Below, one piece after another: positions 5,741-35,540 of a stretch of DNA of 64,000 nt. Origin of the DNA: Laetmonice hystrix (Eukaryota); contig OZ249451.1 of the NCBI GenBank assembly GCA_965235115.1, positions 5,890,001 to 5,954,000 of the forward strand, written 5' to 3'. The notes under the pieces are model-generated. The model saw nothing but the letters and a program-made list of their open reading frames with translations. It did not search any database and was not told the origin of the DNA. Within the stretch, counting starts at the first letter, position 1; the number at the start of each line of letters is the position of its first letter. Made by a program: the position numbers and the translations under genes.

Positions 5741-6122
5741 GCACATTGTGTGTTGTTTACGTCGAGAAAGGAATTACAGGGACATCAACAATTTCGCCCA
5801 TTGCTCGAAGACAGGGCACGTCGGGTCTGGAGAGTCGGTTTAAGATGAGTTCGGGGGTTGTCCCCTTTTATCAGGGGCACACAGGGGTGGTGTGAGAGGC
5901 GTGGATGGTGAGGAGGAGGGCGTAGTTTCCATCGTCCGTGGAGCGTCAGCGAGGACCGACCGACTGTCCGTCCTTCACCCCCCGGCAGGCCGCAGCCCGC
6001 CCGCCCGCCGCCGGGGCCTGTGTCGCAGCAGCAGCAGCAGAGTGGCATCTCATCCTCATCCTCATCCTCCCCTACCGTCAATCATACCCCAACACGACCA
6101 TCACCAAACACAACATTCGGGC

Positions 6123-9100
6123 ATGTCCGATCTGTCGTTTTCGCTAGCGTCTCCTCAGAATCTTAAGTCCTACTTCACCATGACGCACAGTCTATCCTCG
6201 TGGTTGAATAACATCAAGTCGGATGACATTGATGGTGGCTTGGCTGCTGACTTCGATGGTTCGCTGTCGGGGTTGGGCGTGGAGCTGGGGAGCTCTACCT
6301 ACAATATGAGGTTTGTAAACAACCCCCCCCCCCGACCCCACCAAAAAAAACACCAAAAAACAATAGATCTATTAAAACCCTTATGCCTTAAATTAATTAT
6401 TGCTTGAACTGAGTTGAAGATAACAAGTTTACAAAATAATATGAAAAAAATTGATCCAGACATGAAGAATTTTAATGAAACTGCTCTCATGGCCAGGAAA
6501 CAAAACGGCATGTTCGTGATAAAAATAAACAATACAGTAGTCGGTACAGGACTGGAGCATCATATGATGGCATATATGCCGAGACGCTACATCTTTTCCC
6601 TGCTGTGACTTGACCCAACTGCTCTGCCGAGCATTTTTGAGCTACATCCCTTTACGGAACATTAGTTGCAAACATTGCCCTAAGCTAAACTATATTAAAT
6701 TCATTTTAAGCTAAGAAGAACATTTGACAGTTGCATTAGATTTTCTGTGACAGTCTGAGCACAATTTACAGTCCCTGGTCTAAACTCTACATGTTAATTA
6801 TTTGCACACCAAAAAATGAATTTGCTTATAAAAATTCAGTGGTTACCACAAAAAACAAATAAGTTGGAACTAACGAAGCTAGAGGAGGCCCTGAAATTTA
6901 GCTGAATGTCTGTTAAGTTTAATCATAGATCAACAGTCAAAGTGTAGTGTATGAGGGGAAAATACTTTAGGCAAAATTTATTTTGTGTGCATACCTGACA
7001 CTGACAGTAGATCAAGATATACGACAGGCATTTAATAAAGGTCAGTTCAAGTCTTTCCATTAAAAGGAATTGCAATATGTGGTATAATATATTGTTCATT
7101 GTCCATCTTCTGGGTGCAGTGATAGGGTTTGTCCTTGAAGGGTCATTGTTGTAAAGTCGAGGTGATGACACCAAGCCATGTGACTTGCTGTGGTTTGAAC
7201 TTTCCCGAGTTGTAGGCCGACTGATGGTCGCCTTAACCCTGGTGGTTTGTCCTGTAAGTGGTTTCTGATAACTTTATCACTACTGTCAACATAGGCACAG
7301 CTACGTCACCTTCTACCTACATGGTTGGTAAGATTCTGCATCAAAATGGAAATATTTGACCTTGATGTGGATAAGATAAGATAAGTACTGACTGATACTG
7401 ATAGCACATTCCTTTAAGTCTCTGTTTTCAGAAGACAGCTGCATTTAAAAAGATTTTTTTTAAACACTTTAAAAAGTCAATTGACACCCAAGGCTTGAAA
7501 TAAGTGGTATCGCATCGCAGTTTGCAATCCAGAATTCACGTTTTACAATACATAACAGATATAACAGATTTGAGGGCGGTAGGTTTTTTCTAATACAGTG
7601 AAGATATGTTGGTTTTATTTCTTACAGTGAAGCGCTGCTCGCTCTTCCGGTGTTCAAACAGGAAAGTCTCGAGGCAGGGTAGGTAGTGTGCAAAAGTTGA
7701 GTTTTGTAATGTCGCAACATTGAAAAAAGTCCGTAAAGAATCCTTCCCACTGCTGTAAACAGAGTTTGAACAATCTAGCATAAATTTCTGTTCATCTGAG
7801 ATTGCTTATGTAGAGTTCATGTAGAAGCTAAGATGTAAATCTTAGCTTGAAGTTAGTTTGAAGCACCAACATGTTTTTCAGAGATGAGTGTGAAAATGCT
7901 TGCCATTCTGACGATGTGCGTGCAACAACGCCGAGCGGCGAATCAACAACCTTCTCCGTTGAACTCATGCAGGGAGCGCTTGTCGTCAGTTCTGAAAACA
8001 ATAGGTTTGTATGAAGAATTCTTGTTTCCTTTGTTTTTTCGATAACTGAATATAATTAGCTTTTGGCCAATAGTAAGAATGAGACAGTAAAGTGACAACT
8101 GACTGAAGTTATTGCAACATGAACTGTTGCAGCAGTCTTCTTTCACTTTTTTTACAGCAAAGGCTGTGAATATATTGGCATGTATGAACCACAGTACATA
8201 TTTCAGAGCTGGTGTGTCCATATGTGTTATGTTTGATATAAATCATTTTTATTGAAAAGACTCATGAGGGGCATTAAGCCTGCTGTACACTCACGACTTT
8301 GTCCAACTTTGAGTTGGGAACCAGTTAGGAGGGCACACCAAAATCGTAGCCAATTAAAAAAATAAATGAGGAACCAAGCAGCTTGGCTGCAGTTAACCAA
8401 AATCAGGAGTGTGCTTGCTTTCTGATTATGGCCAACTGTTGTCGGCTTTCTTGGGCCCTTATAGTCAGTTGGGAGAGTGCCTGGCAGTCAGTCAGGAGTT
8501 TGGCGAAGTCGTGAGTGTTTTACAGATGCTGAATGGAACAGCAACAAGTAGGAAAAGTGTGAAAGTGTGACTTAAAGTAACATTATTGACCAAATGATTT
8601 ATAGCAAAGGTCACTCCTTGAAAAGGTGGACTGTTAAAAAAGGAAGTATCATGACTGAATCTACTGGGTATAATAATAACAAATAGAATGCATATCAGCA
8701 GGGGTCTTCAGTTTTATATTAGGGTTACAAATACCTAACTCTCACGAATTATTCTACAAATTATCCCACCCAATTCTTTCTCATTATCCATAAAGGTATC
8801 TGGTTTGAGTTTTAAAAATATCAGGAAGTATAATATCAATGATTGGCACTACTGCCATCCAATCATCCGTGAGGTAAGTGGTGAGGTATGTCAGGGTTGA
8901 GAACAGTACAATATACAATCAAGGTAACGTTAAACTCGTATCAGGGTGATCAGAGGCAGAATCAACACGAGAGCTTCTCTTATGCACTGCAATGCTATAA
9001 AGAATGCACCTTACCAAAATGCTCTGCTCTCAACAGGAATTTTTTTTGTAATTTTTTTTATCTTGATTTGTATGAAATCTTGCAGTAAATTTTTATTTCT

Positions 9101-12100: not shown

Positions 12101-15100
12101 GGGATCCAAGGTCATGTAACGGGATCCAAGGTCATGTAACGGGATCCAAGGTCATGTAAAGGGATCCAAGGTCATGTAAAGGGATCCAAGGTCATGTATT
12201 GATAGTTTTCTCATGTATTTTCCAGGTTTCAGTATATACTGGGTGCACCTACTTCACCAGCCACTAAGATGAATGAGGAAACGTTGACTTACTTGAATCA
12301 AGGTAGGATGCATGTTCTCAATAAAAGAAAAGAAAATCTCTAGATTAATTGACTGTAACTGTTCATAATTAGATTTATTAACATGACTAATTGAGTTCTT
12401 TTTTTTTCTTTCAGGCCAGTCTTATGAAATCAAACTTAAAAGATATGGAGAAACCGCAGAGTACGGCAACATAAAGGTAAGTATTAAAGAGTTTATTTTT
12501 CAAATTTTAATTTTTCAGGGGTCGCACCTTTGTCATAGAATCCTCCAGGCCCGGTGTGAAATAAAGTTCGTTCCCCTATACAGTATTTGCAGTTGAATTT
12601 GGAAATACCACGGAATCAAATATAACAGAAATCCTAGCAAAAGAAGACTAAAAAGATACAGAGCATTATCCTGAATTGTAAGGCAAGGATTTAAGACCTT
12701 ATTGTCAATTTGTAATGAATGTTTTTTCAGAGTATTGTCCGAGTGGTGTTCCATGACCGCCGTCTCCAGTACATGGAGTTGGAGCAGCTCCAGTTGTGGA
12801 GACTGGGACGGCCCGGAGAACGATTACTTGACATTGGTTAGTACACCTTACACTGGTTATAGTCACACTCGTAATGCAGTGAGGGTGGCAGGGGTGTTAG
12901 GGTTAAGGTAATGAAATGAGATGGGTTTAGCAAAGTTAAACTTATTGAAAAATTTTCCGCAGTCTGACGAGTCACAAAACGTGTCGAGATTTTCTGAAGC
13001 GGTAATCCTGACTGTGGAAGCACTTGGTGCTGACAAAGCAGAATCAGAAACATCAAATGTCAAGATAATGCCAAGAAAGTATGACTAAGTACCATACTAA
13101 TATCAGGAATTGCCTGGGTGAAACAGACTGAGTCTAACTACGTAGTGTTTTTATTTTCACCGTAGATATACCTTTGTCATCCGGAATCACTGATGTCAAG
13201 GTCGAGTCCAACAAACTCAACTCGGTCTCGTTTCGATGGGACCAGAACAAGGACTGCAGTGTGTATGTGAAGGTAAGTCTTAATATATCGTTCTGATACA
13301 CCTCGTCAAACATGAGTATGAGTTCGGGATATGTGGTAGAAATACCCAGGACATAGAGAGTTATGTCAAGAGCACAGAATGAACTGAAGAAATTGGGTTT
13401 TGCCACATCCATTTTGAGATATTTTTGTGTGGTCTTGTTCTGAAGAAATACCAAACTTTTAATAATTGGAGAATTCTGGAGAGGATACAGCCTCGTTAAA
13501 ACCGTATTAAATAATTATTCAATCTTTCTGTGCCCATCGAACCTCTAATGTGAGGTATTGTAATTTGTGTACTAAAAAAACGCTGAGGGACCTCAAAACT
13601 GGGCTGGATTTTGTAATCTTTCATGTCCGTTTCTCAAGCCAGGGATTTTTCCAGATTCCTGCTTTTTCCGCCAAAAAATTTAACACTCAGTGACCGCTGT
13701 GAATCCGTTTTTTCTCCCTTACCTGATCACACCTGTGATTTCTTCCAGGTGCATTGCATAAGTACAGAATTTACAGCCAAGAAACATGGTGGAGAGAAAG
13801 GTGTGCCGTTCAGGGTACAGGTTGAGACTTATGTTGAGGAGGACGAAGACTCGCGTTTGGTACACTGTGCGTCATGTCAGGTCAAAGTGTTTAAGGTGAG
13901 TCAGAGAACAGTCAGTATAATGGTGAAATTTTGGTATTTTGTGCCACTGTTATATATTAGATGGTTCTTGTTAAACATATTTTCGTTCTTCCTTAATTGT
14001 TCAGTAGTACTTACATGTAAATAAACCATACGTCTAAATGTTGTTTATGTAGAGCCTTTAATTTTTAACATTTTTTTCTTTTCTTATTTCAGCCGAAGGG
14101 AGCAGACAGAAAACAGAAGACTGATAGAGATAAAATGGAAAAACGCTCAGGGTCAGAAAAGGTAAATTTTAATTATTTGTCAAAAAAGGTCAATTTTAGT
14201 TTGTCATAAAAGGTAGTTCATTACTCTGATCTATATAAGGAATTTTTGACGTTCTGACAGTAAAGAATTGTGTCTTTTGCATAAACCAACCGTATGTCTG
14301 ATTTTATGAAGATTGAGATGTCATTGCACATCCTATATTCCTGGCTCGCTGACAGTATCGGTGGAGCCGGGGACACAAGCTAGCTTAATTCACTGCCACA
14401 ATCGGTCACGATCATCAAATGATGCTATACCAGGGTAATACTTTTCAACAATTTTGGGATAATTCACTTTCAAAATATGCAGCAGTGTGCCCCCCCCCCC
14501 CCCACATGAAAAAGAAAGAAGGGTAAAAACATATGGAAATCGTGCAAATACACAGTGCAGAGAAAGTTCATGGTATATTAACCTAAGGGAAATTCCAAAG
14601 GAAACTTTCCAGTGCTTAGATAGAAACCTGTATGACGTTATCAGGTCAATGGACGGTTTATCACTCCTGGGGATACACGGGTCTGCAGGCTCCCTCTAGC
14701 GTCAATATAGCTAACTACCAGTTCCCCATTTTACATTTTCCTATATTGATCTTATTGTAATCATTTATCTTAATTTGAATTAATAGTTGGCAGTTGTAGA
14801 CACTTTAATGTTCCATTAATCACAGGTAAATCATACTTCGAGTCCAAACTTAACGTTTCTGTCATTCAAGGTTCCATCGTCAGGCTGATAAGATTGACTT
14901 TTGCCTCGTCTCACATAGATAAATCTTAACTTGTTGAACTTTATGAAAAGGCAATAATTTTACTAGGCTATTAGGTTCTGTTGGATACAATTTAAATAAA
15001 AAAGCCTTGTATAAAATCACCCTCCATAAAATCATAAAATTAGGACAGCACTGGCATAACATTGGTATGCATACATGTAGGTTTTGAAATTGTGAAAATT

Positions 15101-18100
15101 TTTGTATATATTTATTGACAATCGTGACACTAAGGGCAAGGGTTTAAGTTCTATCCAAACGTTTTTTGTGAGGAAGTACCGAATTGTTCATGACTAAGTG
15201 TTAAAACCCCAGCCCCCCCAATAGATATAGACCATTCTCATCATGGTACACCAGGGTAGCCGGGGAAAAAGAAGGCTCACGAGCAAGGAGGCCAGTACGC
15301 ATGCAAGAAAAAAGAGGACTACTTTATCCCAACATTGTACAACGCTGAATCCGTCATATTTGATAAATGAGGCCGACTTTTTATTGGCCAAGCCGAGTGC
15401 CATTTACCGTGGTGATGTGGCAGTTATCCAAGACAGGTCAATGTGAGATTGGGGCAGGCCAGGGTGGTATCTCTGAGAGGGTCGTCGGGAGGGGTTGGAG
15501 GGGTGGGGGCGGGGGGGGGGGGGCCGGTGGACTGAGGACACAGAACAATGTATTCAGACTGGCACTGTAACAGTGCTGCTGCAACCATCGCAAATTTAAT
15601 AGATGCCGGTATAGATTCAAAATAAAAGTAAAATAGGAAGATTCTCTTGTGTGCAGATTAGGATAAAGTAATGTGCTTTTAGTTGTTTTGCAGGCGCGGA
15701 TCTAGGTTTGCGCCCAGGGGTGCGGTGGGGTGGGGGGTTGTGCATGTTTTGTAGCAAGAAAGAAGAATTACTTTGTAACAGGGGGGGGGGGTAGTAAACA
15801 CCCCCCCCCCCCCCCCCATAATCCGTCACTGTGTTGTGTTTTACTTATAAGTTATTAGGTGAAAAGTTATTAGGTGAAAAGTAAATCTGTAAGATGCAAG
15901 GTTCTTGAAACGCAGAACCATTGAGGAAAATAAACGAAATTGACTCTGTTATAGTACTGACTTCATACACGGCCCATAGCACAATGCTTGCTAACCTATG
16001 GTATTATATCCTGAAAGTTATGTTTCAATACTCCACAGGAGAAAGGAATTTGACTTGTGTTTCAGGATGTATCAGAAAGAATGTGTACTCCATAAATATC
16101 AGCTTAGTTCTCAGTGTTATTGCCTTGGTAGGGGGCCTTTTGGTCACCTCTATGAAATGTCTTAACAAGTTTAATATTAGTACAACAAAAATGTATACAG
16201 TTTGCAAGAATAAGTTGGTGAGGTATTTCCAGGGTCGTGTGCAGGATTTTTTTAGGGGGTTAGACTCAGGCTAAGGGAAGCCGTGCTAGGGGGTCTAGAG
16301 CATGCCGGAAAATTGTGGAATTTAAGGTGTAAATTGGTGGCATCTGGTGCATCTTAGAGCACAAAATAAGGTCTGAAATGGCATGTCAAAAGTGCTAGAA
16401 GGGCTTTTTCATTATCTGGATCAGCTATTTTATAACATGAAATTATAATGTCTTAGTGTTATTGATTTGCATTTAAACAAAGGAACACACAAAAGGGTCA
16501 GCTAGGTCATCATGGTGTTAGGGTTTTATAGATGTCGGGCCTATGCTGACCATGATAAGTAGAGACATGTAGCAAGTCTTGTTATGGCCTTGACATTATA
16601 TGTGAGGGACTAGGGCAAGTCTTGGCAGTGGAGCAGGGCATGGTAGGTCCAATCCAGTTCCCGCTGGTAGAAGCAGCTGTCGATCCCGGAGAATATAAAC
16701 ACGGGAGTGTGCGGGCGGGGGGTGAAGGAGTGTGTGGAGCAGGTCGCCGTCTGGGCAGTGAGTCTGTGACAGTGGACGCAGGGGGCAGGCCGTACTGTTG
16801 CCATAGACCACCAGCCGTTTTAACTGTGGTGTATGTGAGTGAGGAGGGGGATCCCAACCATCACATCCCCCGGGAGTACCGTGGAGGGGAGGCCGGTACT
16901 GGGGCCGTGACGGGCCGTGACGGGCCGTGAGGACGGACGGTGTCGGGAGGTGGAACTTTCCATGGACACTACAAGAAGGTTGGAAAGTTTCCATGGGGCA
17001 GGGGGCCTCTGGACTTGTTAAGTAAATCGGCTCAGGCCATGGATCATGGCGAGATTAAGAAATCAAGTTGGGAGGGTTCATGGAACTGTTTTGGGAAGGG
17101 TCAGTCTCGTGGATCAGTCTGGCAGAAGAGACATGGATCATTTTTGTAGGGTATGGATTCTTGGATCAGTTGGGAGATTTCATGGATCAGTATATAAGAG
17201 CCTACAACATGGATCAGTTGTTAATGGGGTGTCATGGATCAGTTTGGAGCTTTCATGGATCAGTGAATCAGTACAGGAGGAGCTGCGGATCAGTTCGTCA
17301 GATTTTAAGGATCACCTGAGGATTTTCAAGGATCATAATTATTGCCAGGTTTCACATGGATCAGCCCCTGTAGAAATTACATGGATCAGTTGCAGAACCG
17401 TTCTGGATCACTGAGATTGTATGAAAACAAAAGGATTGTGGCCCTTGCACTGACCATCAACCAGTGGAGGTGCATGCTCCCTATTTATTAGGATTTAATT
17501 ATTCTTTAGAAATTGGCGTCATCTAAGTACAGGGACTGTAGATAAGATAATCAAGTCAGAATTAATATATATATTAATTAATGTATATTACAAAGTAGTA
17601 TGATTAATATATAAGCAGCAGGCTGGTATATTACTGGTATCTGAAGAAGCTATAGGAGTGTGGGTGGGTGGGAGCAACTTGACCGGGAAGTGCAGGGGGG
17701 AGGCGGGGGGGGGGGGAGTGCTGGAATAGCTCAGGTGGAGGTCGGCACCTTGGAGTCCTACCCAGCAGGTGAAGCTAGTACACAGTCTGTGACGCTGATG
17801 TGTTGAATTCTTGCTCTTGGTTAAGTGAGGCAAGACTCAGAAACCAGTCAGATCGAGAAATGTTGCCTAGCTGGGTCGGGTCAGGTCAGGTCAGGTCAGG
17901 TCAGGTCAGGCTGGGGCTGCCTGTCTGGCTACATGGTGTTGTTTTCTCATCATTTCAACTCAGCCGAACCTAAAGCAAGCCGGGCATACTTGACTGCTTC
18001 CTGGGCGACTGGGGCTCTCAGACTCTGAGGCCCTTGTAACCAGTAGACTGGTACATAGTATGTGTGGAGATGTATAAGTAAGTCTACACCAACTTTATAT

Positions 18101-21100: not shown

Positions 21101-24100
21101 GTTTGTTTTTGCATCTATTGGAGTTCCCACATTTTATAATTAGCTGATTGAATGAAATTAGAAATTATTTGTCTCATGACCTTGACCTTGGCTGTGAATT
21201 AACCTTGACCCTGCGTATTCAGCTGCCCTTGGAACAGGTGCAGAGTTATCTGGAGCAGCTGCTGCAGCAAGAACTGCTGCAGCCTGAGTACAAGAAGTGG
21301 TCGGACTTCAATGTAAAGAAGTGGAACATTTCACCACCACCACCGCCAACACCTGCAGCAAGCTCGACCTCCGAGACGACCCCCTCCCACATGGTCAACT
21401 ATAACCTGGGAGATGCGCCCTACAGCCCTGCCAGCTCTGTCGAGTCACTGTATGTCTTAAATTGTCTAATTAGACGGATTAAATAACTTAGATTAAACTT
21501 CACCAATATAATTATAAAGTGCATTTTTGGGGTCCCATATTTGTTATCTTTTGTCAGGTTTTGCCCCTCATTGTGGACTCAGCAGAGATACTAGGGTTTG
21601 TCACTCCAGCACAGGGCTGGAAAGTGTTTGGTGGGTTGCTAAAGCAACCAAGAACCAGTTATGTCTTGATGACGTCACAATGTGTGTGACATCACTAACT
21701 GACTTCACAGTAGGTGTGAGTCACAGTTAATTTTGATGAAGTCACAAAAACACATTTTACTGTGATCAGTTAACGTTATACCAGAAATATATGTGGCCAA
21801 GAAAGTGTGTTGAAGATGATGTTTGCCACTGAAGTTCAGTTTAGGAGTACAGCAAACTCACATTATTTACCTCAGACTATGTTGAATTACTTTACTTTAA
21901 ATTTAATGTTAAATCACTTTTTTTCATTTCAGTGAGAAAAGTCGTCCAAGCCGGAAGTTCCGAGGTAGCACCAGCGATGAGACGCCCTCCGTGGCTGTCC
22001 CAGTGCCAACCAAAGGGTCAAAGAGTTCAGCCACAGCTAGCGTGGCGTCGGAGGTGGGTGTAGTGCAGCGCCATATTGTGATTAAACCACGAACTAGCAA
22101 CACACCTCTGATGTTTTCAGAGCCTTGTGCAAAGACTGAAGATGTGAGTATAGAATAATGGATATGACCAGGGCTGGAGACTCCTAACATTATCAATAAA
22201 TCACCTGCTTGTTCTAAAATTCTCAAGGTGTACTCAAAGAAATCTGACATGCCATGAGAAACTCATAATTTCCATTTATAATTTACACTTTAGCATCATT
22301 GGGGAGGAAAAATTCCTCAACCCTTTTAGATAATAATGCTTTAGAATTTATGAACAACCAGGTGCACGTTTTTGAAAACAAGCAAAAAACTCATTTTGCT
22401 GACTAAAATCAAAGGCTGCTTTGTAGTCACACTCATGTTTCACCTGGTGCTTTAGAGTTCTTTATTTGCGACATTTGCTGTAAATTGTCTGCTTGATCTG
22501 AGTGTCCAGCCCTGAATTTTAAGTGGTGTTACGAAAAGATTTGTAATTTATCTTTGTCTTACAAGTTGACAACATAACTTGAGCATGGATACATCCTGGC
22601 ATTTCTCTTTGCTTTGTTTAAAACCAGCGTCTTATGTGACATAAACTTGTATCCGACTTGTTGGTAACAAAACAAATTGATTTGAATTATGCTTGTGCAT
22701 GTGTAACAGTACTGGGTGATACCCAATCTGACTATTCCCACCGGTTGGTTGTAAACTAGCATCTACAGGTTACCTTGATCCCGTGGTATAAACCACATCC
22801 GTGTCTAATCTCCAGTCAAGTTTTAGGGCCAGTCAAGGCTAGAGCTACTGAGCAGAGAATCATGAAACTTAACAGGTCTTTAGGCAATTTATCTCTGATT
22901 TTTTTTTCATCCTTTATCAATTTATAGGAGTTGATGTAAAGTTTAAGGCAAGTAACTACGACACCTGGGGGCGGGGGGGGGGCGGGGGGCGTTTCACGCA
23001 CTGTATGAGGGTACATCTCAGATTATAATCAGAAGAATTCCTCAAGTCAAGTTCTGTTCCATGAAGGAAGGGTTTTATCAGTGTTGAGGTGGTAATGGTG
23101 GGTTGCACACTTGGAGAGTGTGAGTACCTAAAGTCTGGGTTAGGATTCGCTAGCTAGAGTATTCATGCTGTACAATCAGTTTGTGATCACCAATAGTGGT
23201 ATGTGGTATTTGATCCACTTTGATTATTGCAGACTGTCTGGTGCTTTATGTTGACAGATTAAGCCGCTGTCGTCAACGGCAACGGCCCAACAAGTGACAA
23301 CATGGCTCCAGGCGAATCGCTTCTCAAACTATGTCAAGGTGTTCCAAAATTTCTCAGGTAGGTCGGAATTACCCGGCAGCATTATTTTGAGTAGCACACA
23401 TCAGAACTCAGAAAAGAAAAACTTCTACAAAGGACTTATGGAAGCAGCAGCCCCCCCCCCCCTCCCCCGGCATTCCAAGTGACCGAATTCCAAGTACATG
23501 AATTTTCTCCTGTTTGCAGGTGCCGATGTTCTTCGTCTTACGAGGGATGATCTTATACAGATATGTGGACTTGCCGACGGAATACGGTTAAACAACGCAA
23601 TACAATCAAAGTAAATGTCATGTTTGTAAAGTTTGGAAATTCATGGAATAGGTAACGTTTCCACCTTTAATCAGCACAGCAAAGTAAAAATACTGTACAT
23701 AAGTTAACCTGTTCTGATAAATCCAATGTTTGATTGTAGAACGGTCCGCCCTAAATTGACCATATACGTCAGCCAGATGGACGACTCAGCTAGCACAAGT
23801 AAGAGTTACTCTAATTCCTTGAGCAACCTGATATAAGTTATAAATGTAGGGATGTGTTTAAATGCAAACCATATAGGTTTGATAGTTATCCGGTGACAAG
23901 CTATTCGTACTCTAACTTGACACATGTATCCTACATGCCATAACGTACTAACAGGGATATATTGATAGCTAGAACAATCAGTTGACAGTGACTGCAAGAT
24001 TACAAATGTTTTAATTGTTCAATGTCGGTTCATCCACCAGAATCTACAAAGTCAAGCGGACAGCTGAATGTGACAAACAGTGACAAGTCCCCGTCAGTGT

Positions 24101-25768
24101 CTCCACCGGGTCCCGTGACCCCACCTCCCGGCAGCTCACCGACCTCAGAAAACTCGCAGGGTTCTATGGTCACTGAACATGTCAGAAAGAAACTCAGTTT
24201 TGTACGAGTGTCAACAGTGTCGTCACCCGTGGCTGTTCCGGCATTGTCAACCAAACGACAGATACAGGATGCGGAGCCGGAGGAGGTGGAGCAGGTCTCC
24301 TCCAGTAAGAAGCAAAGAACGAGAGCGTTGCGAATGTCACAGGCAGAAGGTAATATTTCATCACCAAGAAAGTGACGTAATATCGCGAGTAAACACACTA
24401 TAAGTGAATGGTTTGTGCCACATGTATAAAACGTTGAAATACGCACTTAGGCAAAATAGGTATGAACTGAAAACCAGATTACATTAGTGATACCAATAAA
24501 TTGACTGTCCTAGTGTCCTTTGTATTCTCCAGTTTACCACGCCCTGTACCTGGACACTCTGACAGTCGAGGCTATGGTCTCCAAGATTGCCGAACTTTTC
24601 TCCATTAACGCTGATCAACTCATCGAGACATTTGTTGTCGGACCATCAGGAATCAACGTGTTTGTCACAGACAGTGTCAGTATACACACCAGAACTTCCT
24701 CATACATAGCCTGGTATCGAGATATTCTCAAAGAGAAATCAGAAGTCGGATTCGTTCAGTCACAATTCCCCTAAAAAAATAGTAGGGATACCCACAAACG
24801 TCATTTTCCACGAAATGGTATTATAGCCTTTTGTAAATTGACCGTTCTGGTATGCATAGATGGGTGCCTTGTAATAACTTAGCCTTGTCTCTCGACGGTC
24901 TAGAACTTTATCTTGTAATAATTTAGCCTTGTCTCTCTCTACAGGTGGTCCAGAACTTTGTCTTGTAATAACTTAGCCTTGTCTCTCTCGACAGATGGTC
25001 CAGAACTTTATCTTGTAATAACTTAGCCTTGTCTCTCTCGACAGGTGGTCCAGAACTTTGTCTTGTAATAACTTAGCCTTGTCTCTCTCGACAGGTGGTC
25101 CAGAACTTTATCTTGTAATAACTTAGCCTTGTCTCTCTCGACAGGTGGTCCAGAACTTTGTCTTGTAATAACTTAGCCTTGTCTCTCTCGACAGGTGGTC
25201 CAGAACTTTGTCTTGTAATAACTTAGCCTTATCTCTCTCGACAGGTGGTCCAGAACTTTGTCTTGTAATAACTTAGCCTTGTCTCTCTCGACAGGTGGTC
25301 CAGAACTTTGTCTTGTAATAACTTAGCCTTATCTCTCTCTCGATAGGTGGTCCAGAACTTTGTCTTGTAATAACTTAGCCTTGTCTCTCTCGACAGGTGG
25401 TCCAGAACTTTGTCTTGTAATAACTTAGCCTTGTCTCTCTCTCGATAGGTGGTCCAGAACTTTGTCGATCAGTCACGTTTCTATTTGGAAGCAGAACAAG
25501 GTACGTCAGGCCTTTCACATATAAAAAAACTATGAAAAATATTTCTTTGAAAACTTTAAAAAGGGGGCAATTATTAAGAAACGATACATTTGCCTATTCA
25601 TTCCAGCTTTGGGATTAAACGTGGCCTAAAACCGAGTAATAAACGTTTTCTTTTCTCAATCCTATATTGTACGTGGTGTTGTACCCTACAGAGCCAGTTT
25701 TTGCTATTTTTTTTCCAGATGATGACGCCACAAGCAAATACCGGTTACTGATGCGTCTCTTGGATTGA
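6123..25768 (+). CDS. TFCP2: LSF/CP2-family transcription factor (probable co-orthologue of vertebrate TFCP2/UBP1/TFCP2L1): CP2 DNA-binding domain, SAM domain and C-terminal domain
   Basis: Phase-consistent exons: 6123-6310 (start could be ATG 6180; [10 protein letters not shown]), 7628-7678 ([13 protein letters not shown]), 12226-12302 ([23 protein letters not shown]), 12415-12476, 12731-12836 ([11 protein letters not shown]), 13166-13272, 13749-13895 ([22 protein letters not shown]), 14093-14161 ([12 protein letters not shown]), 20865-20906 (EKYQPSYE), 21223-21449, 21933-22143, 23258-23357 and 23520-23610 (SAM: [27 protein letters not shown]), 23740-23798 (VRPKLTIYV), 24041-24349, 24533-24675 (VYHALYL..GPSGI), 25449-25500, 25719-25768 (TGA). 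Confidence 0.96.
7882..8004 (+). CDS. Candidate in-frame cassette exon of the TFCP2-like gene
   Basis: TTTTTCAG acceptor, 123-nt open frame ([40 protein letters not shown]) and AG|GTTTGT donor. It is phase 2 at both ends, like the flanking junctions. No homology recognised. Confidence 0.55.
8283..8525. mobile_element. Short degenerate inverted-repeat (MITE-like) element in a TFCP2 intron
   Basis: ACACTCACGACTT (8287-8299) is the exact reverse complement of AAGTCGTGAGTGT (8506-8518); the outer CTGTA/TACAG also pair. Confidence 0.45.
9430..9850. mobile_element. Old MITE-like element with imperfect terminal inverted repeats of about 40 bp
   Basis: AGTTTCTTACTTGAACTTGAGTTGAAATTTACAGCT at about 9431 pairs imperfectly with AGCAGTAAATTTCAACTCAAGCTCTAGAAAGAAACCT ending at 9850. 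Confidence 0.5.
12061..12198. repeat. 20-bp minisatellite, about 7 units, just upstream of a TFCP2 acceptor
   Basis: GGGATCCAAGGTCATGTAA(A/C) x6 plus an 18-nt partial unit. Confidence 0.97.
15691..15831. mobile_element. Short poly-G/poly-C MITE-like element (CAGGNGCGGATC family)
   Basis: Begins CAGGCGCGGATCTAGG and ends ATAATCCGTCACTG, with internal G and C runs. Similar ends occur at 36978 and 45453-45634. Target duplication not resolved. Confidence 0.5.
17041..17410. repeat. Dispersed array of (CAT)GGATCA(G) motifs with non-identical spacers
   Basis: GGATCA starts at 17041, 17111, 17135, 17163, 17184, 17211, 17236, 17257, 17287, 17309, 17330, 17358, 17383 and 17405 (14 copies). Confidence 0.85.
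17881..17910. repeat. (TCAGG)6 pentanucleotide microsatellite
   Basis: Read directly from the sequence. Confidence 0.95.
18629..20194 (+). mobile_element. Non-autonomous Helentron-associated element (HINE/DINE-1-like) in a TFCP2 intron
   Basis: 5' T-run, then subterminal repeat TAGCCCCCAC (18634-43) with a nearby partial complement, then a (GTCC)n microsatellite (about 18667-18726). Internal tandem duplication of about 460 bp (about 18835, 19298, partial 19752). 3' inverted copy GTGGGGGCTA (20166-75), hairpin AAGCTT-CAC-AAGCTT (20177-91), then GTT. This is the established HINE layout. Confidence 0.8.
24868..25465 (+). repeat. 50-bp minisatellite (12 units) built from the TFCP2 penultimate-exon acceptor plus the exon start
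   Basis: Unit CTTGTAATAACTTAGCCTTGTCTCTCTCGACAG|GTGGTCCAGAACTTTGT. The first unit is degenerate, two units are 52 bp, and the last runs into the real exon at 25449. Confidence 0.97.
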
Positions 25769-28971: not shown

Positions 28972-29010
28972 TGACGTCACCAGTCGTCATCACGTTCAGC
29001 CAATCACGTG
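28972..29010 (+). promoter_or_regulatory. Candidate promoter cluster for the SAM-like gene (CRE, CCAAT, E-box)
   Basis: TGACGTCA at 28972-79, CCAAT at 29000-04 abutting CACGTG at 29005-10, in CpG-rich DNA. A candidate UTR donor CAG|GTAGGT lies near 29331. Confidence 0.4.
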
Positions 29011-29785
29011 CCGTTTCCATCTCGGGAATGGGTGGACCATGGCTATACTGTCTGAAACCTATATACGTCAATTCACGTTGGATACGAACTGCGGAATGGA
29101 TGTCTGTATCTATCCATCAGAGGAGCATTGTTGTGACATATGGCCGGCCTAGAAGGATTAGTTCTAGATCTTTCCTTTTACTCTTTTCTGCCGCTCAAAG
29201 CACACGGATGTGACTAAGGATCTTGAGCAGCCAGTAGGGCTATGTGCTGTTCCATTTCGTGAAGCGAGATCAAACTCGTTTTGGTTTCCTGAAACCTCCT
29301 AGTACAGTATCTAACGCAGGAGTGTGCACAGGTAGGTCTGTGCGTGTGTTGTGTGTCTGATATTTAAAACGACCTTAAAAGAAAATAGGCCTAGGCCTAC
29401 CATGCATGCTGCGAATTGCGCTTGGTTCTTACCAGACTTTTTGGAAAAGGTCTTCCAAAAGTGGCCCAACTGCTAAACTTTAAAGTACATTTTGCTTAGA
29501 CATTCAGAGGCCATGAACTTTTGGTAATGATGCTTTGTTTTACTTTTATCTTTAGCAAACATCCTATATGAATGAACGAAAGAAATGTGTAGGGGAATTT
29601 CTGTTCGTTATTGCAGACTGGTTAGGCCCTATCATGCCCTCTTAAAGTTCCATTTAGGTCCTTCATCGGGGCAGAGGTCTAGCTGCTCTGTTACTCATGT
29701 ATTTCATCCATGTATTTTGTCCAGCACCGGATCAGCCAGATTCCGGATCGAGACATTCTGCAACAGTTTTCTGTCGGTTGAGAAC

Positions 29786-32700
29786 ATGGCCTCAAGGTCA
29801 GGTCCGAACACAAGTGACTTTATCATCCGGTGGTGTAGCAAATACGGCCTGTCCTACGACACCGCGCCTTTTCTGGCGTCAAAAGGTTTTACTAGCGCCA
29901 CACATATATACTCCCTGGGCCGTTAGCAGGTTGAAACACTTTCCATCCCCTTGGATCAACGGCAACTTTTACGCGGAGCGTTATTACAATTCAAAAAGAG
30001 TGACGCAAAGTTCGCCAAACGTCAGGCAAGGAAGAACACTTTGCCTCTCGAAGAGGTCCTGTTTGTAGGGAAGGACATTGAATTGGAAAGGTCACAACAG
30101 ATGCAAGCGTCTACGTCTAATATCGGTAGGCATTCGTCTGTTAGATTGACTACTAAAATATAAAGGGAAAACACGTGCATTCCCTTTGTTATACATATGT
30201 AACTACATCAAGTCTATTGATTCTTCGTCTTCTAAATGCCTGGGCATTCATCTAGATAAAATTTCCTGCATTAGGATGCCAAGTTTCTCGAATATCAATG
30301 GAGCCTATACTGTATAGATCTAGACACTATACTGCATGAGTTGCCAGTAAATTCAGGTGGAGAATCTGTCTTCAAAAAGCAAACCATTCCTTTCACGATG
30401 CCCCCCCCCCCCCCCCCCCCCCCATTCCACAAAACGCAGCTTTTCTGTTTGCAGCTCAAGAGAAGCCGCCTGAAGATGTTGCGCGCAGACGACGCCGACG
30501 AAAGCCTAGAGAGGATCGAGGCAACTCAACGGAAGGACAAACGCTGGCCGACCGTATCATGGGGCAGCGGGAAAATCGGAAACGGCAGCAGGTGCATGGC
30601 CTATTGATGCTAGTGACAGCAGAAGTTGTACACTGTACTAGTCTTTGAAGCAACATGCATATGCAGTGGCAAAACATTTGGGGGTTCCAACACTATTTCG
30701 CATTCATTTCATCGCGGAATTTATCACCTTCTGCATGTTTGCCCGAAAATTATATTCAAAAGAATGAGGCGATAAATATAGTCTAGGCTATGAAAGAAAA
30801 TAATAAAAATAAAAACAAGAAGAGAAAACACATTGATTAATGTACAATTGTACATCACTGGCAGAAAAACACAGAGGTCTATAATAGTACTCTTGAACGA
30901 ATCGCTAAAATTTGCACTGCATGGTGCCTCTCGCTGCCTTATCAGCCCTTACTTAATTACAGAATTTAGAGTAATACATGTATATTCGTTGCTCTCTAGC
31001 CAAAACCATCAGCGTCAAAAATTCGAACTGAGTCTAAATTATTAATGACCTGGCAGTGTGCGACTAGTCGATATATCTACTGGCTGTAATCAACGCCCCC
31101 CCCCCCCACCGTTCTCATATCTAAAGCTACAAGAAAGGTTTCTACTACAGGTAGAGTCGACTGAGTATATATCGAGAATATGTCTTCATGTTTGGGGTCC
31201 ACTCGTATTATTTCCTATCTGTTAGCGTCGATTTGTGAAAAACAATTTTTACTTCTCGGGGATGGTTTATCAATTCTCTAGAGAGATAGATATATAGACT
31301 CAGAGTTCGATTAAAGAGCGGGCCGATACAGCAAATAGCTGCTACGGTTTCACAACAAGCACACACATGTGAAGGTTGTAGGGAATGGGGCCTACTGCCA
31401 AGAGTTAAAACTAAATGTCATTACAGAACCTTTTTGGTACATTTCCTTGTGCACTAACAATGCCATCAGCTGGAAGGGACTTCTTTTTATATTATATCAT
31501 TCATTCATATTTCATGAGTGTCGGGCTATTTGTTATATATGCCCACTGATTATAAACGTATGGATAATTAAATGTTCTTGCAGTGAAATACTATACAGGG
31601 TGTCTCAAAAAAATGGTAATCCAAAAACAAAGGGCTTTTGTGACCAGCTATACGTAAATTTAGAGAAGATAAATGGCTGAATCATAAAGTATGGTTCATG
31701 AGCTTTCCAGTGACACCATCCTGACCTTCCTGTGGTCGCGCATTGCCGAACTGTGGGGTTTTAAAAATGGGACATCAGAATCCAAAATTTACAACTTGGG
31801 ATATGGTTGAAATTGACACCAAAACAACGCCAATCACCCGATCTTACCCCGTGCAACTTCTTTCTTTGGGGACATTTGAAAGACAGGGTATTCACCGATC
31901 CTCCTCGGGATATCGCAGAGTTACGGGCCCGAATCACCCACGAGGTGAACAACCTCCAAAACAACCCCGCAATGGTTAGAAGAGCTGTTCACGACATGCT
32001 TCGTCGCTGCAACCTTTGCCTCCAGAGAGGGGGTGGACATGTTGAAGGGGTTGGTCCGTGAATGATGGTGCAAGATTGTACCCGCATCAAATCTGGTTTA
32101 CGTAAAACTGGCACGCCTATGGCTGTTACATGTTCTGTAAATAAAATCTCTGACGAATCTTTGGCGTTGTTTTGGTGTCAATTTCAACCATATCCCAAGT
32201 TGTAAATTTTGGATTCTGATGTCCCATTTTTAAAACCCCACAGTTCGGCAATGCGCGACCACAGGAAGGTCAGGATGGTGTCACTGGAAAGCTCATGAAC
32301 CATACTTTATGATTCAGCCCTTTATCTTCTCTAAATTTACCTATAGCTGGTCACAAAAGCCCTTTGTTTTTGGATTACCATTTTTTTGAGACACCCTGTA
32401 GTAGGTCTGCAACATTGCCTTGTTACAGGCTTCAGCCAGTTCGATGTCACAGCTATCATTCTACTCAACGACATCCTGTTCAACATCCGAAGGCAGTGAG
32501 AATATGACGATGGATGGAGTGATAGGCCTACCAGTAGTATCTCGTAGACAAACTCAGCACGCGTCTCCATGGAGTGCACAGACAGAAACGACAGGTATGA
32601 ATTTGGAAGAACTCGTTCCTGAAGCGACAAAAGATGACGATGGCGGAGCATGGAAGAAAGGCAAAGTCCCCGAAGACGATCTCGAGTTTAAAACGAGCCC

Positions 32701-33004
32701 GGCAGGAAAAGCGACGTTTACTGGCTTACCGTCCCTCCAGGGGGAAGTATTTACTCAAACCGATTCGCCAGTGCTCAATACGATGAGCAGTGATGAAATT
32801 GACCAATTAGAGAAGGCATTAGATCAGAACCTCCATGATATACTGACAGGTTTCAAAGAAAAACACCCAATGGACGACTTTAAAACTCGGTCGAAAGACC
32901 TCCAAAGAGCCCACGAGATTTTAGAAAACGAACTGTTCAATGCAAAAGACAAACTCATCATTAAAAAAATAGATCGTTCCAGAACGTGCGAGGAAATGAA
33001 ATAG
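29786..33004 (+). pseudogene. Three-exon gene for an N-terminal SAM-like-domain protein (about 350 aa if the stop is read as sense), interrupted by TAG at 29924-26
   Basis: ATG 29786 in strong context (AACATGG). Exons 29786-30125 (phase 1, GTAGGC), 30455-30591 (phase 1 in, 0 out, weaker GTGCAT donor) and 32429-33004 (phase 0) join in frame. FIIRWCSKYGLSYDTAPFLASKGFTSATHIYSLGR*QVETLSIPLDQRQLLRGALLQF follows the SAM hydrophobic pattern across the stop. Confidence 0.62.
31596..32398 (+). mobile_element. Young non-autonomous Tc1/mariner (ITm) deletion derivative, 803 bp
   Basis: TA target duplication (31594-95 and 32399-400). 238-bp TIRs (31596-31833, 32161-32398) begin CAGGGTGTCTCAAAA, with only 2 mismatches seen. 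The interior keeps only the transposase C-terminus SPDLTPCNFFLWGHLKDRVF...GGHVE, with N at the third catalytic D position. Confidence 0.95.
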
Positions 33005-33734
33005 CTTGCACCATGAGACATTCACATTGAGATCTAGACAACTCAGCCTATTCCGTATGTACCATAATCGGCCAGCTTTCAGGCAGGCCTCGGCTGTGAA
33101 TCTCTCCGTCGAAAGGGTTCATTTTTAGACAGCACGCATTCTCCGCAGCAAACGTTCTATTGCCGGTGTTCGTCAAAACATTATACAACTCCGCCTTTTG
33201 ACCACGTCGCTCCAGTTGCAGGATATGTTCTTTGTGGGGGCCCACCCCAATGAAAACACGGTCGAAATGCAGCAGCGCCTACTGGCGGAGATTGTGAGAA
33301 ACTTGAATTAAACACGTACTGTATGCATCCACTGACATTTTAACATGGCCTATTGGGGCGGGGGGGGGGGTGAAGCCTATTAAAAACCACCCACTTTTTT
33401 TCATTAGGGGGGGTTGCAACCCCCCACCCCCACCCCCGGTTCCGCCGCCTGCTGAAAACTGCTGACAGGATTAGCAGTCACACGACAGATGCATACCGGC
33501 CGATCAGCGCTTGTTTGCACCACTGCCACAAGGGGGATACATACATAGCTCTATGAAACAAGGGGCAGTGCGATGGGTGTTCATCACTGAGTTGGATTTT
33601 TATTTTGCCTGAAACATTAATATGACAAATAGACGACTATTATTTAATTCTCGGACTCTCCAGCTATAGACAACCAATGCCGATATAGATAATTATTTAT
33701 AGCGGGTTCGTTGTTTTGACCTCGGAGCGACATT

Positions 33735-35540
33735 TCACCGCCATATCCCACCCAAGACTTTCCTGATAATGAAAAGCCACTGTGAGCGTCTTTCCTGTCC
33801 ATGGAAATATCTTCCCGATCTGACATCCTCGTAGTTTATTTTCAAATTAATCATTCTGCCGTAATAGCGGAGGTAGGTGGCGCCCCCGTCGCTGTGTAAG
33901 CCGCTTAACGTCATGGACCTTTTGAAGAACGCGTTTACGAAGATCAACAGAGCTTTCTCGTACAACTCGCTCTCGTCGCTCGTTCGTTTATATGATGTTC
34001 CATTTTCATTAATCTTAGATAGCACAGAATCGTCATGCCGAGAGAAAACTCCGCATTTGCGAGCTATCGCTATTGCGTAGAATATTCTTGATATCTTCAG
34101 ACGGTTTTTATTTTCGAATGCTATGCTACGTCTTGATGACGTCAGCATTCGATGAGCTATCACAGTGTCTTGCTCGTAGAACTGGCGAAGGTTAAATGCA
34201 ATGTCCTTGACCATACGGGTCAACCTCTCGACAGTGACATTTACGTCCCGGTTCGAATAGACACTACTTACTTTCAGAACATTGAATCCCGGGACGAAAA
34301 AGCTGGACACTTTTCTAACCAGCAGTGCTTGTGAAAGGATATCGAAGATTTCTATTGTCCTTACTGCAATGTTGCCATCTCCCTCCCAGCTGCAGTCGTT
34401 CGGATATTTCACGACTAGATAGAACCAAATAGTTTTTAGCCAATATGTTGGAACCACGTTGGCCATTTGACAAGTGGAACTGTTGTAATCAGACATTATG
34501 TACAAATTGCGTATCATCTTAGCTATTCGCAAGACTCGTTTCTTTGGAAGGCTTATCGCGCGTTCTAAGATGTGACGTTCTTCAACTGATGACGTCACTC
34601 GCGCCATTGTCCTCCCTGGCGTTGTCATGATGACACGTACCGTGTTTATATCATTCTCTGCGACTTGGTTTTGAGAAATCTTCATCGCGGAAGATTCCTT
34701 GTCATGGTCATCAACTAGTCTGGGCCCGAGATAGAAATGTTCCCAACTGATTGGCCGCTCATGTGAGGCGCAGAACCGTGATGGTAGTATTTGGAACGGT
34801 ATTGTCAAGACAACATCTACACAAACCTTCAGTGATTTATATTTGGCACCATTCCATATGAGCGTGTAGGTGAACACTTTTCCATAATCTGCAGACACTT
34901 TCTGAATGACACTCAAAGGGGACCATTGCCACCCCTCCTGCAGTACAGCCTTCAGTGCGTCTCCTATGGCATCGAATATACAGCGAAACCACACACTGCG
35001 GAGGGACACCGAGTACCGAGATTTCTTAGCAACATCTTTATGAAAAACAGGGAAAAGATCTTTAAATATATCTTCATTTACCACTTCATACAGTACTGAG
35101 AAGCAGGAGTCATTCCTAATGTCATGAATCTCCAATTTTGTGTTCTCTTCATCCGCGAGGACTGGCAGATCTATCATGAAGTCGAACTCATCTGGGGCGC
35201 CAAGTTTTAAACCTTCGTAACTACTTCCCGTCTTAAGCAGACGACACTCTTTGAAAAGTTGTAATTTTCCCGCCAAAATTTCACAGGCGTTTTCCATCAT
35301 TGCCTCAAGACTTCGGAATATACGCTCCTTTTCTTGAGTTTCTAGCATTTCGCATTTTTCCTCTAATTTGCGAAGGAATCGGCTGAATCTTTTCCCAGGT
35401 TGAGCAGATGAACTTCCAGATTCGGAGCTGCTGTATCGTCTGTTTTGTGCGTCTCTAGCTGCGTTTGTCGTCAGCGTCCAGTCAGTAAGGGGGGACGGCG
35501 GGCGCGTGTAGCACTTATCTCTCCAACCTGTAAATACCAT
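33735..35540 (-). CDS. cGAS-like receptor (cGLR; Mab-21/cGAS nucleotidyltransferase family), 601 aa, single ORF
   Basis: TGSSYEGLKLGAPDEFDFMI (GS plus E-x-D), third Asp in VCVDVVLTIP, and helical-bundle motifs TYWLKTIWFYL and SSFFVPGFNVL. There is no vertebrate cGAS zinc thumb before KKRVLRIAK. An in-frame TAA lies 2 codons upstream of the ATG, and AATAAA on - at 33599-33604. An upstream exon via TTTACAG near 35530 cannot be excluded. Confidence 0.93.
   Translation of the reverse strand: MVFTGWRDKCYTRPPSPLTDWTLTTNAARDAQNRRYSSSESGSSSAQPGKRFSRFLRKLEEKCEMLETQEKERIFRSLEAMMENACEILAGKLQLFKECRLLKTGSSYEGLKLGAPDEFDFMIDLPVLADEENTKLEIHDIRNDSCFSVLYEVVNEDIFKDLFPVFHKDVAKKSRYSVSLRSVWFRCIFDAIGDALKAVLQEGWQWSPLSVIQKVSADYGKVFTYTLIWNGAKYKSLKVCVDVVLTIPFQILPSRFCASHERPISWEHFYLGPRLVDDHDKESSAMKISQNQVAENDINTVRVIMTTPGRTMARVTSSVEERHILERAISLPKKRVLRIAKMIRNLYIMSDYNSSTCQMANVVPTYWLKTIWFYLVVKYPNDCSWEGDGNIAVRTIEIFDILSQALLVRKVSSFFVPGFNVLKVSSVYSNRDVNVTVERLTRMVKDIAFNLRQFYEQDTVIAHRMLTSSRRSIAFENKNRLKISRIFYAIAIARKCGVFSRHDDSVLSKINENGTSYKRTSDESELYEKALLIFVNAFFKRSMTLSGLHSDGGATYLRYYGRMINLKINYEDVRSGRYFHGQERRSQWLFIIRKVLGGIWR

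What the first reader, a model, noticed from the sequence alone, without database searches (positions are those of the whole stretch)
29786..33004. Hidden SAM-like gene facing the cGLR, knocked out (or read through) by a single TAG inside the SAM fold
Seen: two separately listed ORFs (29585-29926 and 29951-30163) are in the same frame, separated by only one TAG, and the SAM-like pattern spans it. Two more exons join with correct phases, adding an RRRRRRKPR basic patch and a helical C-terminus. There is a CRE/CCAAT/E-box cluster upstream, and the stop lies 730 bp from the cGLR stop (tail-to-tail). Established: SAM domains polymerise in immune effectors such as SARM1. Inference: a possible cGLR partner or scaffold, here a recent null allele. 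Proximity alone does not show a functional link.
Basis: partly seen in the sequence, partly recalled or inferred. Interest (0 to 1): 0.7.

Follow-up and report, generated by a model that had tools for sequence, protein, structure and literature searches.

The report
Orphan gene with a segregating stop codon
Next to a cGAS-like immune gene lies a probable small three-exon gene found only in this animal lineage; its in-frame stop codon is one of two natural alleles (the other reads glutamate), and neither a SAM fold nor a link to the immune gene could be shown, so it is ordinary.

Summary
The sequence observation holds. An ATG at 29786 opens a 350-codon, three-exon model (29786-30125, 30455-30591, 32429-33004). 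The phases fit, the splice sites are GT..AG, and the only internal stop is TAG at 29924-29926 (codon 47).

The main new fact is that the stop is polymorphic. In one biosample, the contig of one run reads G at 29924 (GAG, Glu) and the contig of another run reads T. So a null allele and an open allele coexist.

The gene is probably real:
- In-frame codon usage is the best of the six frames.
- Only about seven loci in the window have 190 or more codons with at most one stop.
- The C-terminal 72 residues have one homologue in another assembly (44% identity, E 1.3e-9).
- No transcript junction could be checked.

The SAM reading is not supported:
- Pfam is blank on the pieces.
- Whole-genome read-through scans with SAM_1, SAM_2 and SAM_3 do not list the locus.
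- A home-made SAM profile ranks it 12th of 296 open pieces of the window.
- hhalign gives P 0.018.
- The second piece alone folds as a generic three-helix bundle.

The link to the cGLR is not supported either. In the one relative, the closest cGLR and the homologous exon lie on different contigs. Verdict: an ordinary lineage-restricted gene with a segregating nonsense allele. The intact domain could not be folded here.

The parts
29786..30125 (+). Exon 1 of the model: start codon plus 113 codons and one base. It encodes the N-terminal helical region.
   Evidence: ATG in good context and donor GT at 30126. In-frame codon-usage score is 0.158 and 0.152 for the two halves, the best of six frames and about the 90th percentile of open pieces in the window. 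The score drops upstream of the ATG (-0.015) and after the donor (-0.887).
29924..29926 (+). In-frame TAG (codon 47). This is a polymorphic site; the other allele is GAG (Glu).
   Evidence: read laying: the X1 contig reads G at 29924 (depth 54, 255 letters from the contig end). The X2 contig of the same biosample reads T.
30126..30454 (+). Intron 1 (329 nt), with a poly-C run at 30393-30434.
   Evidence: GT..AG ends with a pyrimidine tract before the acceptor. No RNA junction was seen.
30455..30591 (+). Exon 2 (137 nt): arginine-rich basic patch RRRRRRKPR.
   Evidence: Its length restores the phase between exon 1 (ends in phase 1) and exon 3 (starts in phase 0). It is stop-free. Codon usage is not decisive: 0.103 in frame against 0.179 in frame +1.
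30592..32428 (+). Intron 2 (1837 nt). It holds a multi-copy element with 240-nt terminal inverted repeats at 31594-31833 and 32161-32400.
   Evidence: The inverted repeat is 99% complementary. Depth is 20-30 times the single-copy level.
32429..33004 (+). Exon 3: 191 codons plus stop. The first ~112 residues are predicted disordered. A helical hairpin follows.
   Evidence: Second-longest ORF region of the window. Codon score 0.19, above the 95th percentile of open pieces (0.183). AF2 gives helices at 121-145 and 151-190 with pLDDT about 90, and the rest is below 50.
32753..32968 (+). Conserved C-terminal module (residues 109-180 of exon 3).
   Evidence: The only homologue among 1.84 billion representatives is P0001 (93 aa): 44% identity, E 1.3e-9. 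It is single-copy in the own genome.
33735..35540 (-). Convergent neighbour: a single-exon 601-aa Mab21/cGLR-type gene. This is context, not shown to be a partner.
   Evidence: Pfam Mab-21_C at 1.4e-08 and the Mab-21 nucleotidyltransferase domain weakly at 0.0033. Homologues are listed.

Best explanation
A probably real, single-copy, lineage-restricted three-exon gene (350 codons) lies between TFCP2 and a cGLR. The reference haplotype carries a nonsense allele (TAG at codon 47). An open allele (GAG, Glu) is present in the same biosample.

The predicted product has four parts:
- An N-terminal helical region of about 110 residues. Residues ~55-110 fold on their own as a three-helix bundle.
- An arginine-rich patch, which looks like a nuclear-localisation or nucleic-acid-binding signal.
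- A disordered Ser/Thr/acidic linker of about 110 residues.
- A conserved C-terminal helical hairpin that probably mediates self-association.

Inferred working: a small nuclear adaptor that pairs through its C-terminal hairpin. The TAG allele stops translation before every recognisable module. It lies 199 nt upstream of the first exon junction, so it should be a null and a likely target of nonsense-mediated decay.

Shown: the gene model in silico, the polymorphism, the conservation of the C-terminal module and the predicted secondary structure. Inferred: expression, nuclear role, dimerisation and decay of the TAG transcript.
For: Gene model:
- Open, phase-consistent model with GT..AG introns.
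- 195 codons with one stop is rare in the window: about seven loci.
- In-frame codon usage is best of six frames for both halves of exon 1 and for exon 3, and it falls off outside the proposed exon 1 borders.
- Exon 3 has a homologue at E 1.3e-9.
- Exon 3 and the second half of exon 1, the two parts queried, are single-copy in the 627-Mb genome, so this is not a repeat.

Polymorphism and expression:
- 29924 is T or G within one biosample. No indel falls in the exons in either run.
- A 167-nt contig of the small run X4 lies in exon 3, at 32670-32835.

Structure:
- AF2 predicts a C-terminal hairpin with pLDDT about 90.
- AF2 predicts a three-helix bundle for residues 48-113, pLDDT 81.5.

Separate from TFCP2:
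- The upstream TFCP2 has its own SAM_3 exons at 23267-23602. It shows no similarity to the candidate.
Against: - No RNA junction, transcript start or end was seen. No listed run is on record as RNA, and X4 covers neither exon 1 nor exon 2.
- Neither half of exon 1 has a homologue in the word-index search.
- The codon score of exon 2 is higher in another frame.
- The homologue covers only the last 72 residues, and its upstream exons could not be read because no DNA was served.
- The nonsense allele itself shows that the gene can be lost without lethality, at least in heterozygotes.
Confidence: 0.55

Rival explanations
1. The N-terminus is a sterile-alpha-motif domain spanning the TAG. The protein is a polymerising scaffold or partner of the convergent cGLR, and here it is a null allele.
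For:
- 21 of 2000 shuffles reach the real score on the home-made profile.
- The genes are tail to tail, 730 nt apart.
- The sense allele puts Glu at the break. From my own knowledge of SAM consensus, not tested here, that suits the acidic turn before helix 4.
Against: - Pfam is blank on the pieces.
- Read-through genome scans with SAM_1, SAM_2 and SAM_3 list 81, 48 and 3 places at E up to 10, and none is this locus.
- The home-made profile scores 1.0 bit, rank 12 of 296 open pieces of the window.
- hhalign probability is 2.6%.
- The second piece folds alone into a three-helix bundle, and its best matches are homeodomain-like, not SAM.
- In the one relative, the cGLR homologue and the homologue of exon 3 are on different contigs. 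No minus-strand ORF follows that cGLR.
- No paper links a SAM-only protein to cGLRs.
Confidence: 0.07
2. There is no functional gene as modelled. Exons 1 and 2 are chance or decaying open frames, and only the conserved helical module of exon 3 belongs to a real transcript, possibly a different one. Alternatively the whole locus is a young pseudogene.
For: - No homologue for either half of exon 1.
- Exon 2 codon usage is not best in frame.
- The only possible RNA trace lies in exon 3.
- A stop codon segregates in exon 1.
- The homologue P0001 is a 93-aa ORF matching only the C-terminal module.
Against: - Three independent open pieces sit on one strand with matching phases and good acceptors.
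- The codon signal starts at the ATG and ends at the donor of exon 1.
- On the G allele the frame is open for 195 codons, which would make it one of the five longest open frames of the window.
- No frameshifting indel appears in any exon in either run.
Confidence: 0.3
3. The TAG never matters, either because it is spliced out or because it is read through.
For: - 34 frame-keeping, stop-free GT..AG excisions exist on paper. One example is 29886..30068, with a fair acceptor tract.
- The stop is followed by CAG. From my own knowledge, untested here, this is part of the known UAG-CAR-YYA read-through context.
Against: - The TAG|CAG acceptors at 29926 and 29929 cannot keep the frame from ATG 29786.
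- Every excision removes much of the N-terminal region.
- The bases after CAG (GTT) do not fit YYA.
- A plain sense allele exists at the same base, which makes a simple SNP the economical reading.
Confidence: 0.05

Closest known systems
Taxonomically restricted (orphan) genes carrying segregating loss-of-function alleles
   Same: - Single copy.
- No family assignment in Pfam, PDB sequences or 1.84 billion representatives, except one short relative.
- A nonsense variant that coexists with an open allele.
   Different: Nothing unusual was found. Expression and allele frequency are unknown.
SAM (sterile alpha motif) domains, Pfam SAM_1 PF00536, SAM_2 PF07647 and SAM_3 PF18016
   Same: Residues ~8-66 align colinearly with SAM domains of the same genome. 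The conserved Trp, the Gly-Leu, the Phe and the Arg-containing last helix are in register.
   Different: The score is at background level: 1.0 bit, rank 12 of 296, hhalign probability 2.6%. The locus is absent from all three read-through genome scans.
Homeodomain-like three-helix bundles
   Same: The AF2 model of residues 48-113 (pLDDT 81.5) matches homeodomains almost exclusively at the top of an exhaustive PDB comparison. The best is DUX4, Z 8.2, rmsd 2.5 over 63 residues.
   Different: Z under 8-13 is common for helical bundles by the tool's own calibration. Foldseek E-values are 0.24 or worse. There is no Pfam Homeodomain hit. The third helix is acidic and lacks the WFxNxR signature, as read directly from the sequence.
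Neighbouring TFCP2/LSF SAM-like domain (upstream gene in the same window)
   Same: Same strand, about 6 kb upstream. It is a true SAM_3 match, at 31 and 27.4 bits in two exons at 23267-23602.
   Different: There is no sequence similarity to the candidate: local score 20, reached by 1219 of 2000 shuffles. The candidate is not TFCP2's SAM and not a copy of it.

Membership tests
SAM domain (PF00536, PF07647, PF18016) | Profile match at or above the curated cut-off | tested here: not met
   hmmscan of the pieces is blank at E up to 10. Genome scans that read through stops list no match at C21:5919786-5920125.
SAM domain (PF00536, PF07647, PF18016) | Colinear match of the hydrophobic core pattern to bona fide SAM domains, above background | tested here: inconclusive
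   A profile of 14 own-genome SAM domains scores 1.0 bit and ranks the locus 12 of 296 open pieces. 21 of 2000 shuffles reach the real score. hhalign gives P 0.018 and probability 2.6%.
SAM domain (PF00536, PF07647, PF18016) | Five-helix bundle of about 65-70 residues | not testable with these tools
   The domain spans the stop, and the tools take no read-through by reference. The halves co-folded at pLDDT about 50 with no verdict. Piece B alone gives a three-helix bundle.
SAM domain (PF00536, PF07647, PF18016) | Head-to-tail polymerisation or other SAM-SAM binding | not testable with these tools
   Needs an experiment.
Homeodomain | Profile match and a basic recognition helix with WFxNxR | tested here: not met
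   No Pfam hit. Helix 3 (residues 41-64 of piece B) is acidic, as read directly.
Homeodomain | Three-helix fold with a long third helix | tested here: inconclusive
   Z is 6-8.2 against many homeodomains, but this is within the range the tool calls a common arrangement.
cGLR partner or operon-like module | Linkage to a cGLR conserved in other genomes | tested here: not met
   P0003 (closest cGLR, 52% identity) and P0001 (exon 3 homologue) are both in ENA assembly ERZ26222911 but on contigs of 116,215 and 231,851 bp. No Mab-21 ORF lies within 10 kb of P0001. This is one relative only, and orthology is unproven.
Tyrosine-recombinase core-binding ('integrase SAM-like') and QRICH1/DUF3504 domains (lead from Atlas features) | Profile match | tested here: not met
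   The Atlas lead scored 0.93 to unnamed clusters, and 0.90 or lower to clusters named for DUF3504, QRICH1 and Phage_int_SAM. Genome scans with PF02899 and PF25561 do not list the locus. Home-made profiles rank it 104 of 260 and 117 of 239.

The most novel reading that the evidence does not exclude
The gene encodes a lineage-specific helical adaptor (SAM-like or three-helix) that works with the convergent cGLR. Its null and functional alleles are kept in the population as an immune presence/absence polymorphism.
Probability: 0.04. Interest if true: 0.6.

Novelty: new member of a known kind. Interest (0 to 1): 0.2.

Why it matters
There is little to gain beyond annotation. The result shows that an apparent 'knocked-out hidden gene' in a reference assembly is simply one allele of a heterozygous site. 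This is common in highly polymorphic marine invertebrates and is a caution for gene prediction from one haplotype.

If the gene is expressed, it adds one orphan protein with a conserved C-terminal helical hairpin. Animals homozygous for the TAG allele would be natural knock-outs for testing any role beside the cGLR. No evidence for such a role was found here.

Tried and rejected
- **Pfam on each piece:** blank. The only rows were sub-threshold: K-box at E 0.048 on exon 3 and DUF4549 at E 0.12 on P0001.
- **PDB sequence search of the two halves:** nothing relevant.
- **Word-index homologue search with both halves of exon 1:** no candidates.
- **Own-genome paralogue search:** only the locus itself.
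- **Co-folding the two halves as two chains (complex prediction):** no verdict, score 0.02, pLDDT about 50. This is evidence neither way.
- **Atlas features:** the first half gave nothing. The second half gave leads to DUF3504, QRICH1 and integrase core-binding clusters, which failed profile tests. The C-terminal module gave nothing usable.
- **Fold search of the exon 3 model:** only rows with TM about 0.2.
- **Hypothesis that the SAM-like exon belongs to, or was copied from, the upstream TFCP2:** rejected.
- **Rfam on the window:** no match.
- **Relative's contigs:** the DNA could not be fetched because the file is too large.
- **Left out:** folding or searching the whole N-terminal domain read through with X. 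It has no reference, long typed strings are not to be sent, and the tools take no read-through by reference.

Full report
**Observation.** The window is eukaryotic DNA, part of contig 21 of a 627-Mb, 35-contig assembly. From ATG 29786 (A at -3, G at +4) I rebuilt the model:
- Exon 1 is 29786-30125, with donor GTAGGC.
- Exon 2 is 30455-30591, with acceptor TTGCAG and donor GTGCAT.
- Exon 3 is 32429-33004, with acceptor TGTTACAG.

The joined sequence is 1053 nt, which is 350 codons plus a stop. The only internal stop is codon 47, and the RRRRRRKPR patch lies in exon 2. Exon 2 has 137 nt, exactly the length needed to carry phase 1 at the end of exon 1 to phase 0 at the start of exon 3. The stop at 33004 lies 730 nt from the end of the minus-strand 601-aa ORF (33735-35540). 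That ORF carries Mab-21_C (1.4e-08) and, weakly, the Mab-21 nucleotidyltransferase domain. The promoter 'cluster' is one CCAAT, one CACGTG and one CRE half-site at 29000-29071, with no full CRE. Only CACGTG is rarer than chance.

**Is it more than chance?** A span of 190 or more codons with at most one stop occurs at about seven loci in the window across six frames. Two of the others are the cGLR and exon 3. I built a codon table from 7,408 codons of long open frames of this genome plus the cGLR:
- The in-frame score is the best of six frames for both halves of exon 1 (0.158 and 0.152) and for exon 3 (0.19).
- For comparison, the median of the 295 open pieces of 60 or more codons in the window is 0.032, and the 90th percentile is 0.148.
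- The score is -0.015 in the open frame upstream of the ATG and -0.887 after the donor, so the signal follows the proposed borders of exon 1.
- Exon 2 is not decisive: 0.103 in frame against 0.179 in frame +1.

**The stop is polymorphic.** Five public runs hold the stretch, four of them from one biosample, and none is on record as RNA. I laid four of them on 29000-34900:
- The contig of run X1 covering 29669-30392 reads G at 29924 (depth 54, far from the contig end). That gives GAG, Glu.
- The contig of run X2 from the same biosample reads T.
- Other sites differ between the two contigs: 29701, 29712, 29867 (Pro28Ser), 29878 (synonymous), 30212 and 32573 (Ser208Gly). So the sample carries two haplotypes, or is a pool.
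- No insertion or deletion falls in an exon in either run.

The TAG is therefore real, because it is seen in a run as well as in the assembly. It is also not fixed: an open allele coexists with it.

No RNA junction could be examined. The small run X4 (59 Mb of contigs, kind unknown) has one 167-nt contig in exon 3 (32670-32835) and nothing on exons 1 or 2.

**Relatives.**
- Exon 3 and the second half of exon 1 are single-copy in the own genome.
- An exhaustive HMMER search of 1.84 billion representatives with exon 3 found one true relative, P0001. It is 93 aa, 44% identical over residues 109-180, E 1.3e-9. It comes from ENA assembly ERZ26222911, on a 231,851-bp contig.
- The two halves of exon 1 found nothing in the word-index search.
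- The closest relative of the cGLR, P0003 (52% identity), comes from the same assembly but from a different contig of 116,215 bp. No minus-strand ORF follows it, and no Mab-21 ORF lies within 10 kb of P0001.

So the only cross-species test available does not show linkage. It covers one relative, and orthology is unproven.

**SAM or not.**
- Pfam gives nothing on the pieces.
- Genome-wide scans that read through stops list 81 places for SAM_1, 48 for SAM_2 and 3 for SAM_3 at E up to 10. None is this locus.
- I built a profile from 14 full-length SAM domains of the same genome and scored exon 1 read through with X. It scored 1.0 bit, and 2.2 bits for the first 75 residues, which 21 of 2000 shuffles reached.
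- Against the 296 open pieces of the window, exon 1 ranks only 12th.

The resemblance therefore exists but is at background level, and it was found by the same eye-pattern that the test measures.

The SAM_3 scan also showed that the upstream gene TFCP2 has its own SAM exons at 23267-23602. Its CP2 exons are at 12209-14152. The candidate is neither part of TFCP2 nor similar to its SAM.

**Structure.** The intact domain could not be folded here, because the tools take no read-through by reference and long typed strings are not to be sent.
- Co-folding the two halves as separate chains gave no verdict.
- AF2 on residues 48-113 alone gives a three-helix bundle with pLDDT 81.5 and pTM 0.64.
- The top matches of that model in an exhaustive PDB comparison are almost all homeodomains, Z 6-8.2. 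Foldseek E-values are 0.24 or worse.
- That Z range is, by the tool's own note, a common arrangement for helical bundles. The third helix is acidic and has no homeodomain signature.
- Atlas features pointed to DUF3504, QRICH1 and integrase core-binding clusters. Profile tests reject that lead.
- Exon 3 is predicted disordered for residues 1-112. It ends in a confident helical hairpin (helices 121-145 and 151-190, pLDDT about 90) that coincides with the conserved module. Fold searches of it are uninformative.

**Ways around the stop.** No GT donor inside exon 1 can use the TAG|CAG acceptors at 29926 or 29929 and keep the frame from ATG 29786. There are 34 other frame-keeping excisions on paper, but each removes much of the N-terminal region. 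With a plain sense allele at the same base, a single-nucleotide polymorphism is the economical reading.

**Verdict.** The most likely reading (about 0.55) is a real but lineage-restricted gene. Its product has an orphan N-terminal helical region, an arginine-rich patch, a disordered linker and a conserved C-terminal helical hairpin. Architecture alone suggests a small nuclear adaptor that self-associates through the hairpin. The reference haplotype carries a null allele. The stop lies before all modules and 199 nt upstream of the first junction, so by the usual rule it should trigger nonsense-mediated decay (inference). The main rival (about 0.3) is that exons 1 and 2 are not part of a working gene. 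The SAM scaffold and cGLR partner reading is left at about 0.07. The finding is ordinary, and the useful result is that the 'knock-out' is one allele of a polymorphic site.

Noticed in passing
window 31594-32400: Intron 2 holds an element with 240-nt terminal inverted repeats (31594-31833 and 32161-32400, 99% complementary, 327 nt between them). Depth in DNA contigs is 20-30 times the single-copy level. The inner ORF (31807-32061) has no Pfam hit. From my own memory, untested, it recalls the C-terminal tail of Tc1/mariner-type transposases.
   Followed up: partly
window 31561-32545, run X4: Over the inverted-repeat element, the small run X4 shows a strong excess of A>G differences (22 A>G and 7 T>C, out of 37 places). 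The DNA-sized runs X1 and X2 are balanced. This would fit an RNA library with ADAR-type editing of the hairpin, but other genomic copies of the repeat could also explain it.
   Followed up: no
window 12209-14152 and 23267-23602 (+): The upstream gene is a TFCP2/LSF-type factor. Its CP2 domain exons are at 12209-14152, and a SAM_3 domain is split over two exons at 23267-23362 and 23510-23602. The C-terminal dimerisation-like exon lies in the open piece 24514-24771.
   Followed up: partly
window 33137-33530: The 730-nt spacer between the two convergent stops holds a highly repeated segment, with depth up to 4495 against about 55-90 nearby and many loose ends at 33255-33302. The only polyA-like signals for the plus-strand gene (ATTAAA at 33307 and 33379) lie inside it.
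   Followed up: no
window 33420-34474 (cGLR 3' half): The contigs of X1 and X2 agree with each other but differ from the assembly at about 19 sites, plus a 4-nt insertion behind 33540. Either the runs' sample is not identical to the assembled haplotype, or the cGLR is highly polymorphic.
   Followed up: no
window 5892-6407, 16559-17146, 61260-61931 (+): These are other long open frames of the window (171 aa; 196 codons with one stop; 223 aa). None has a Pfam match, and their nature was not pursued.
   Followed up: partly
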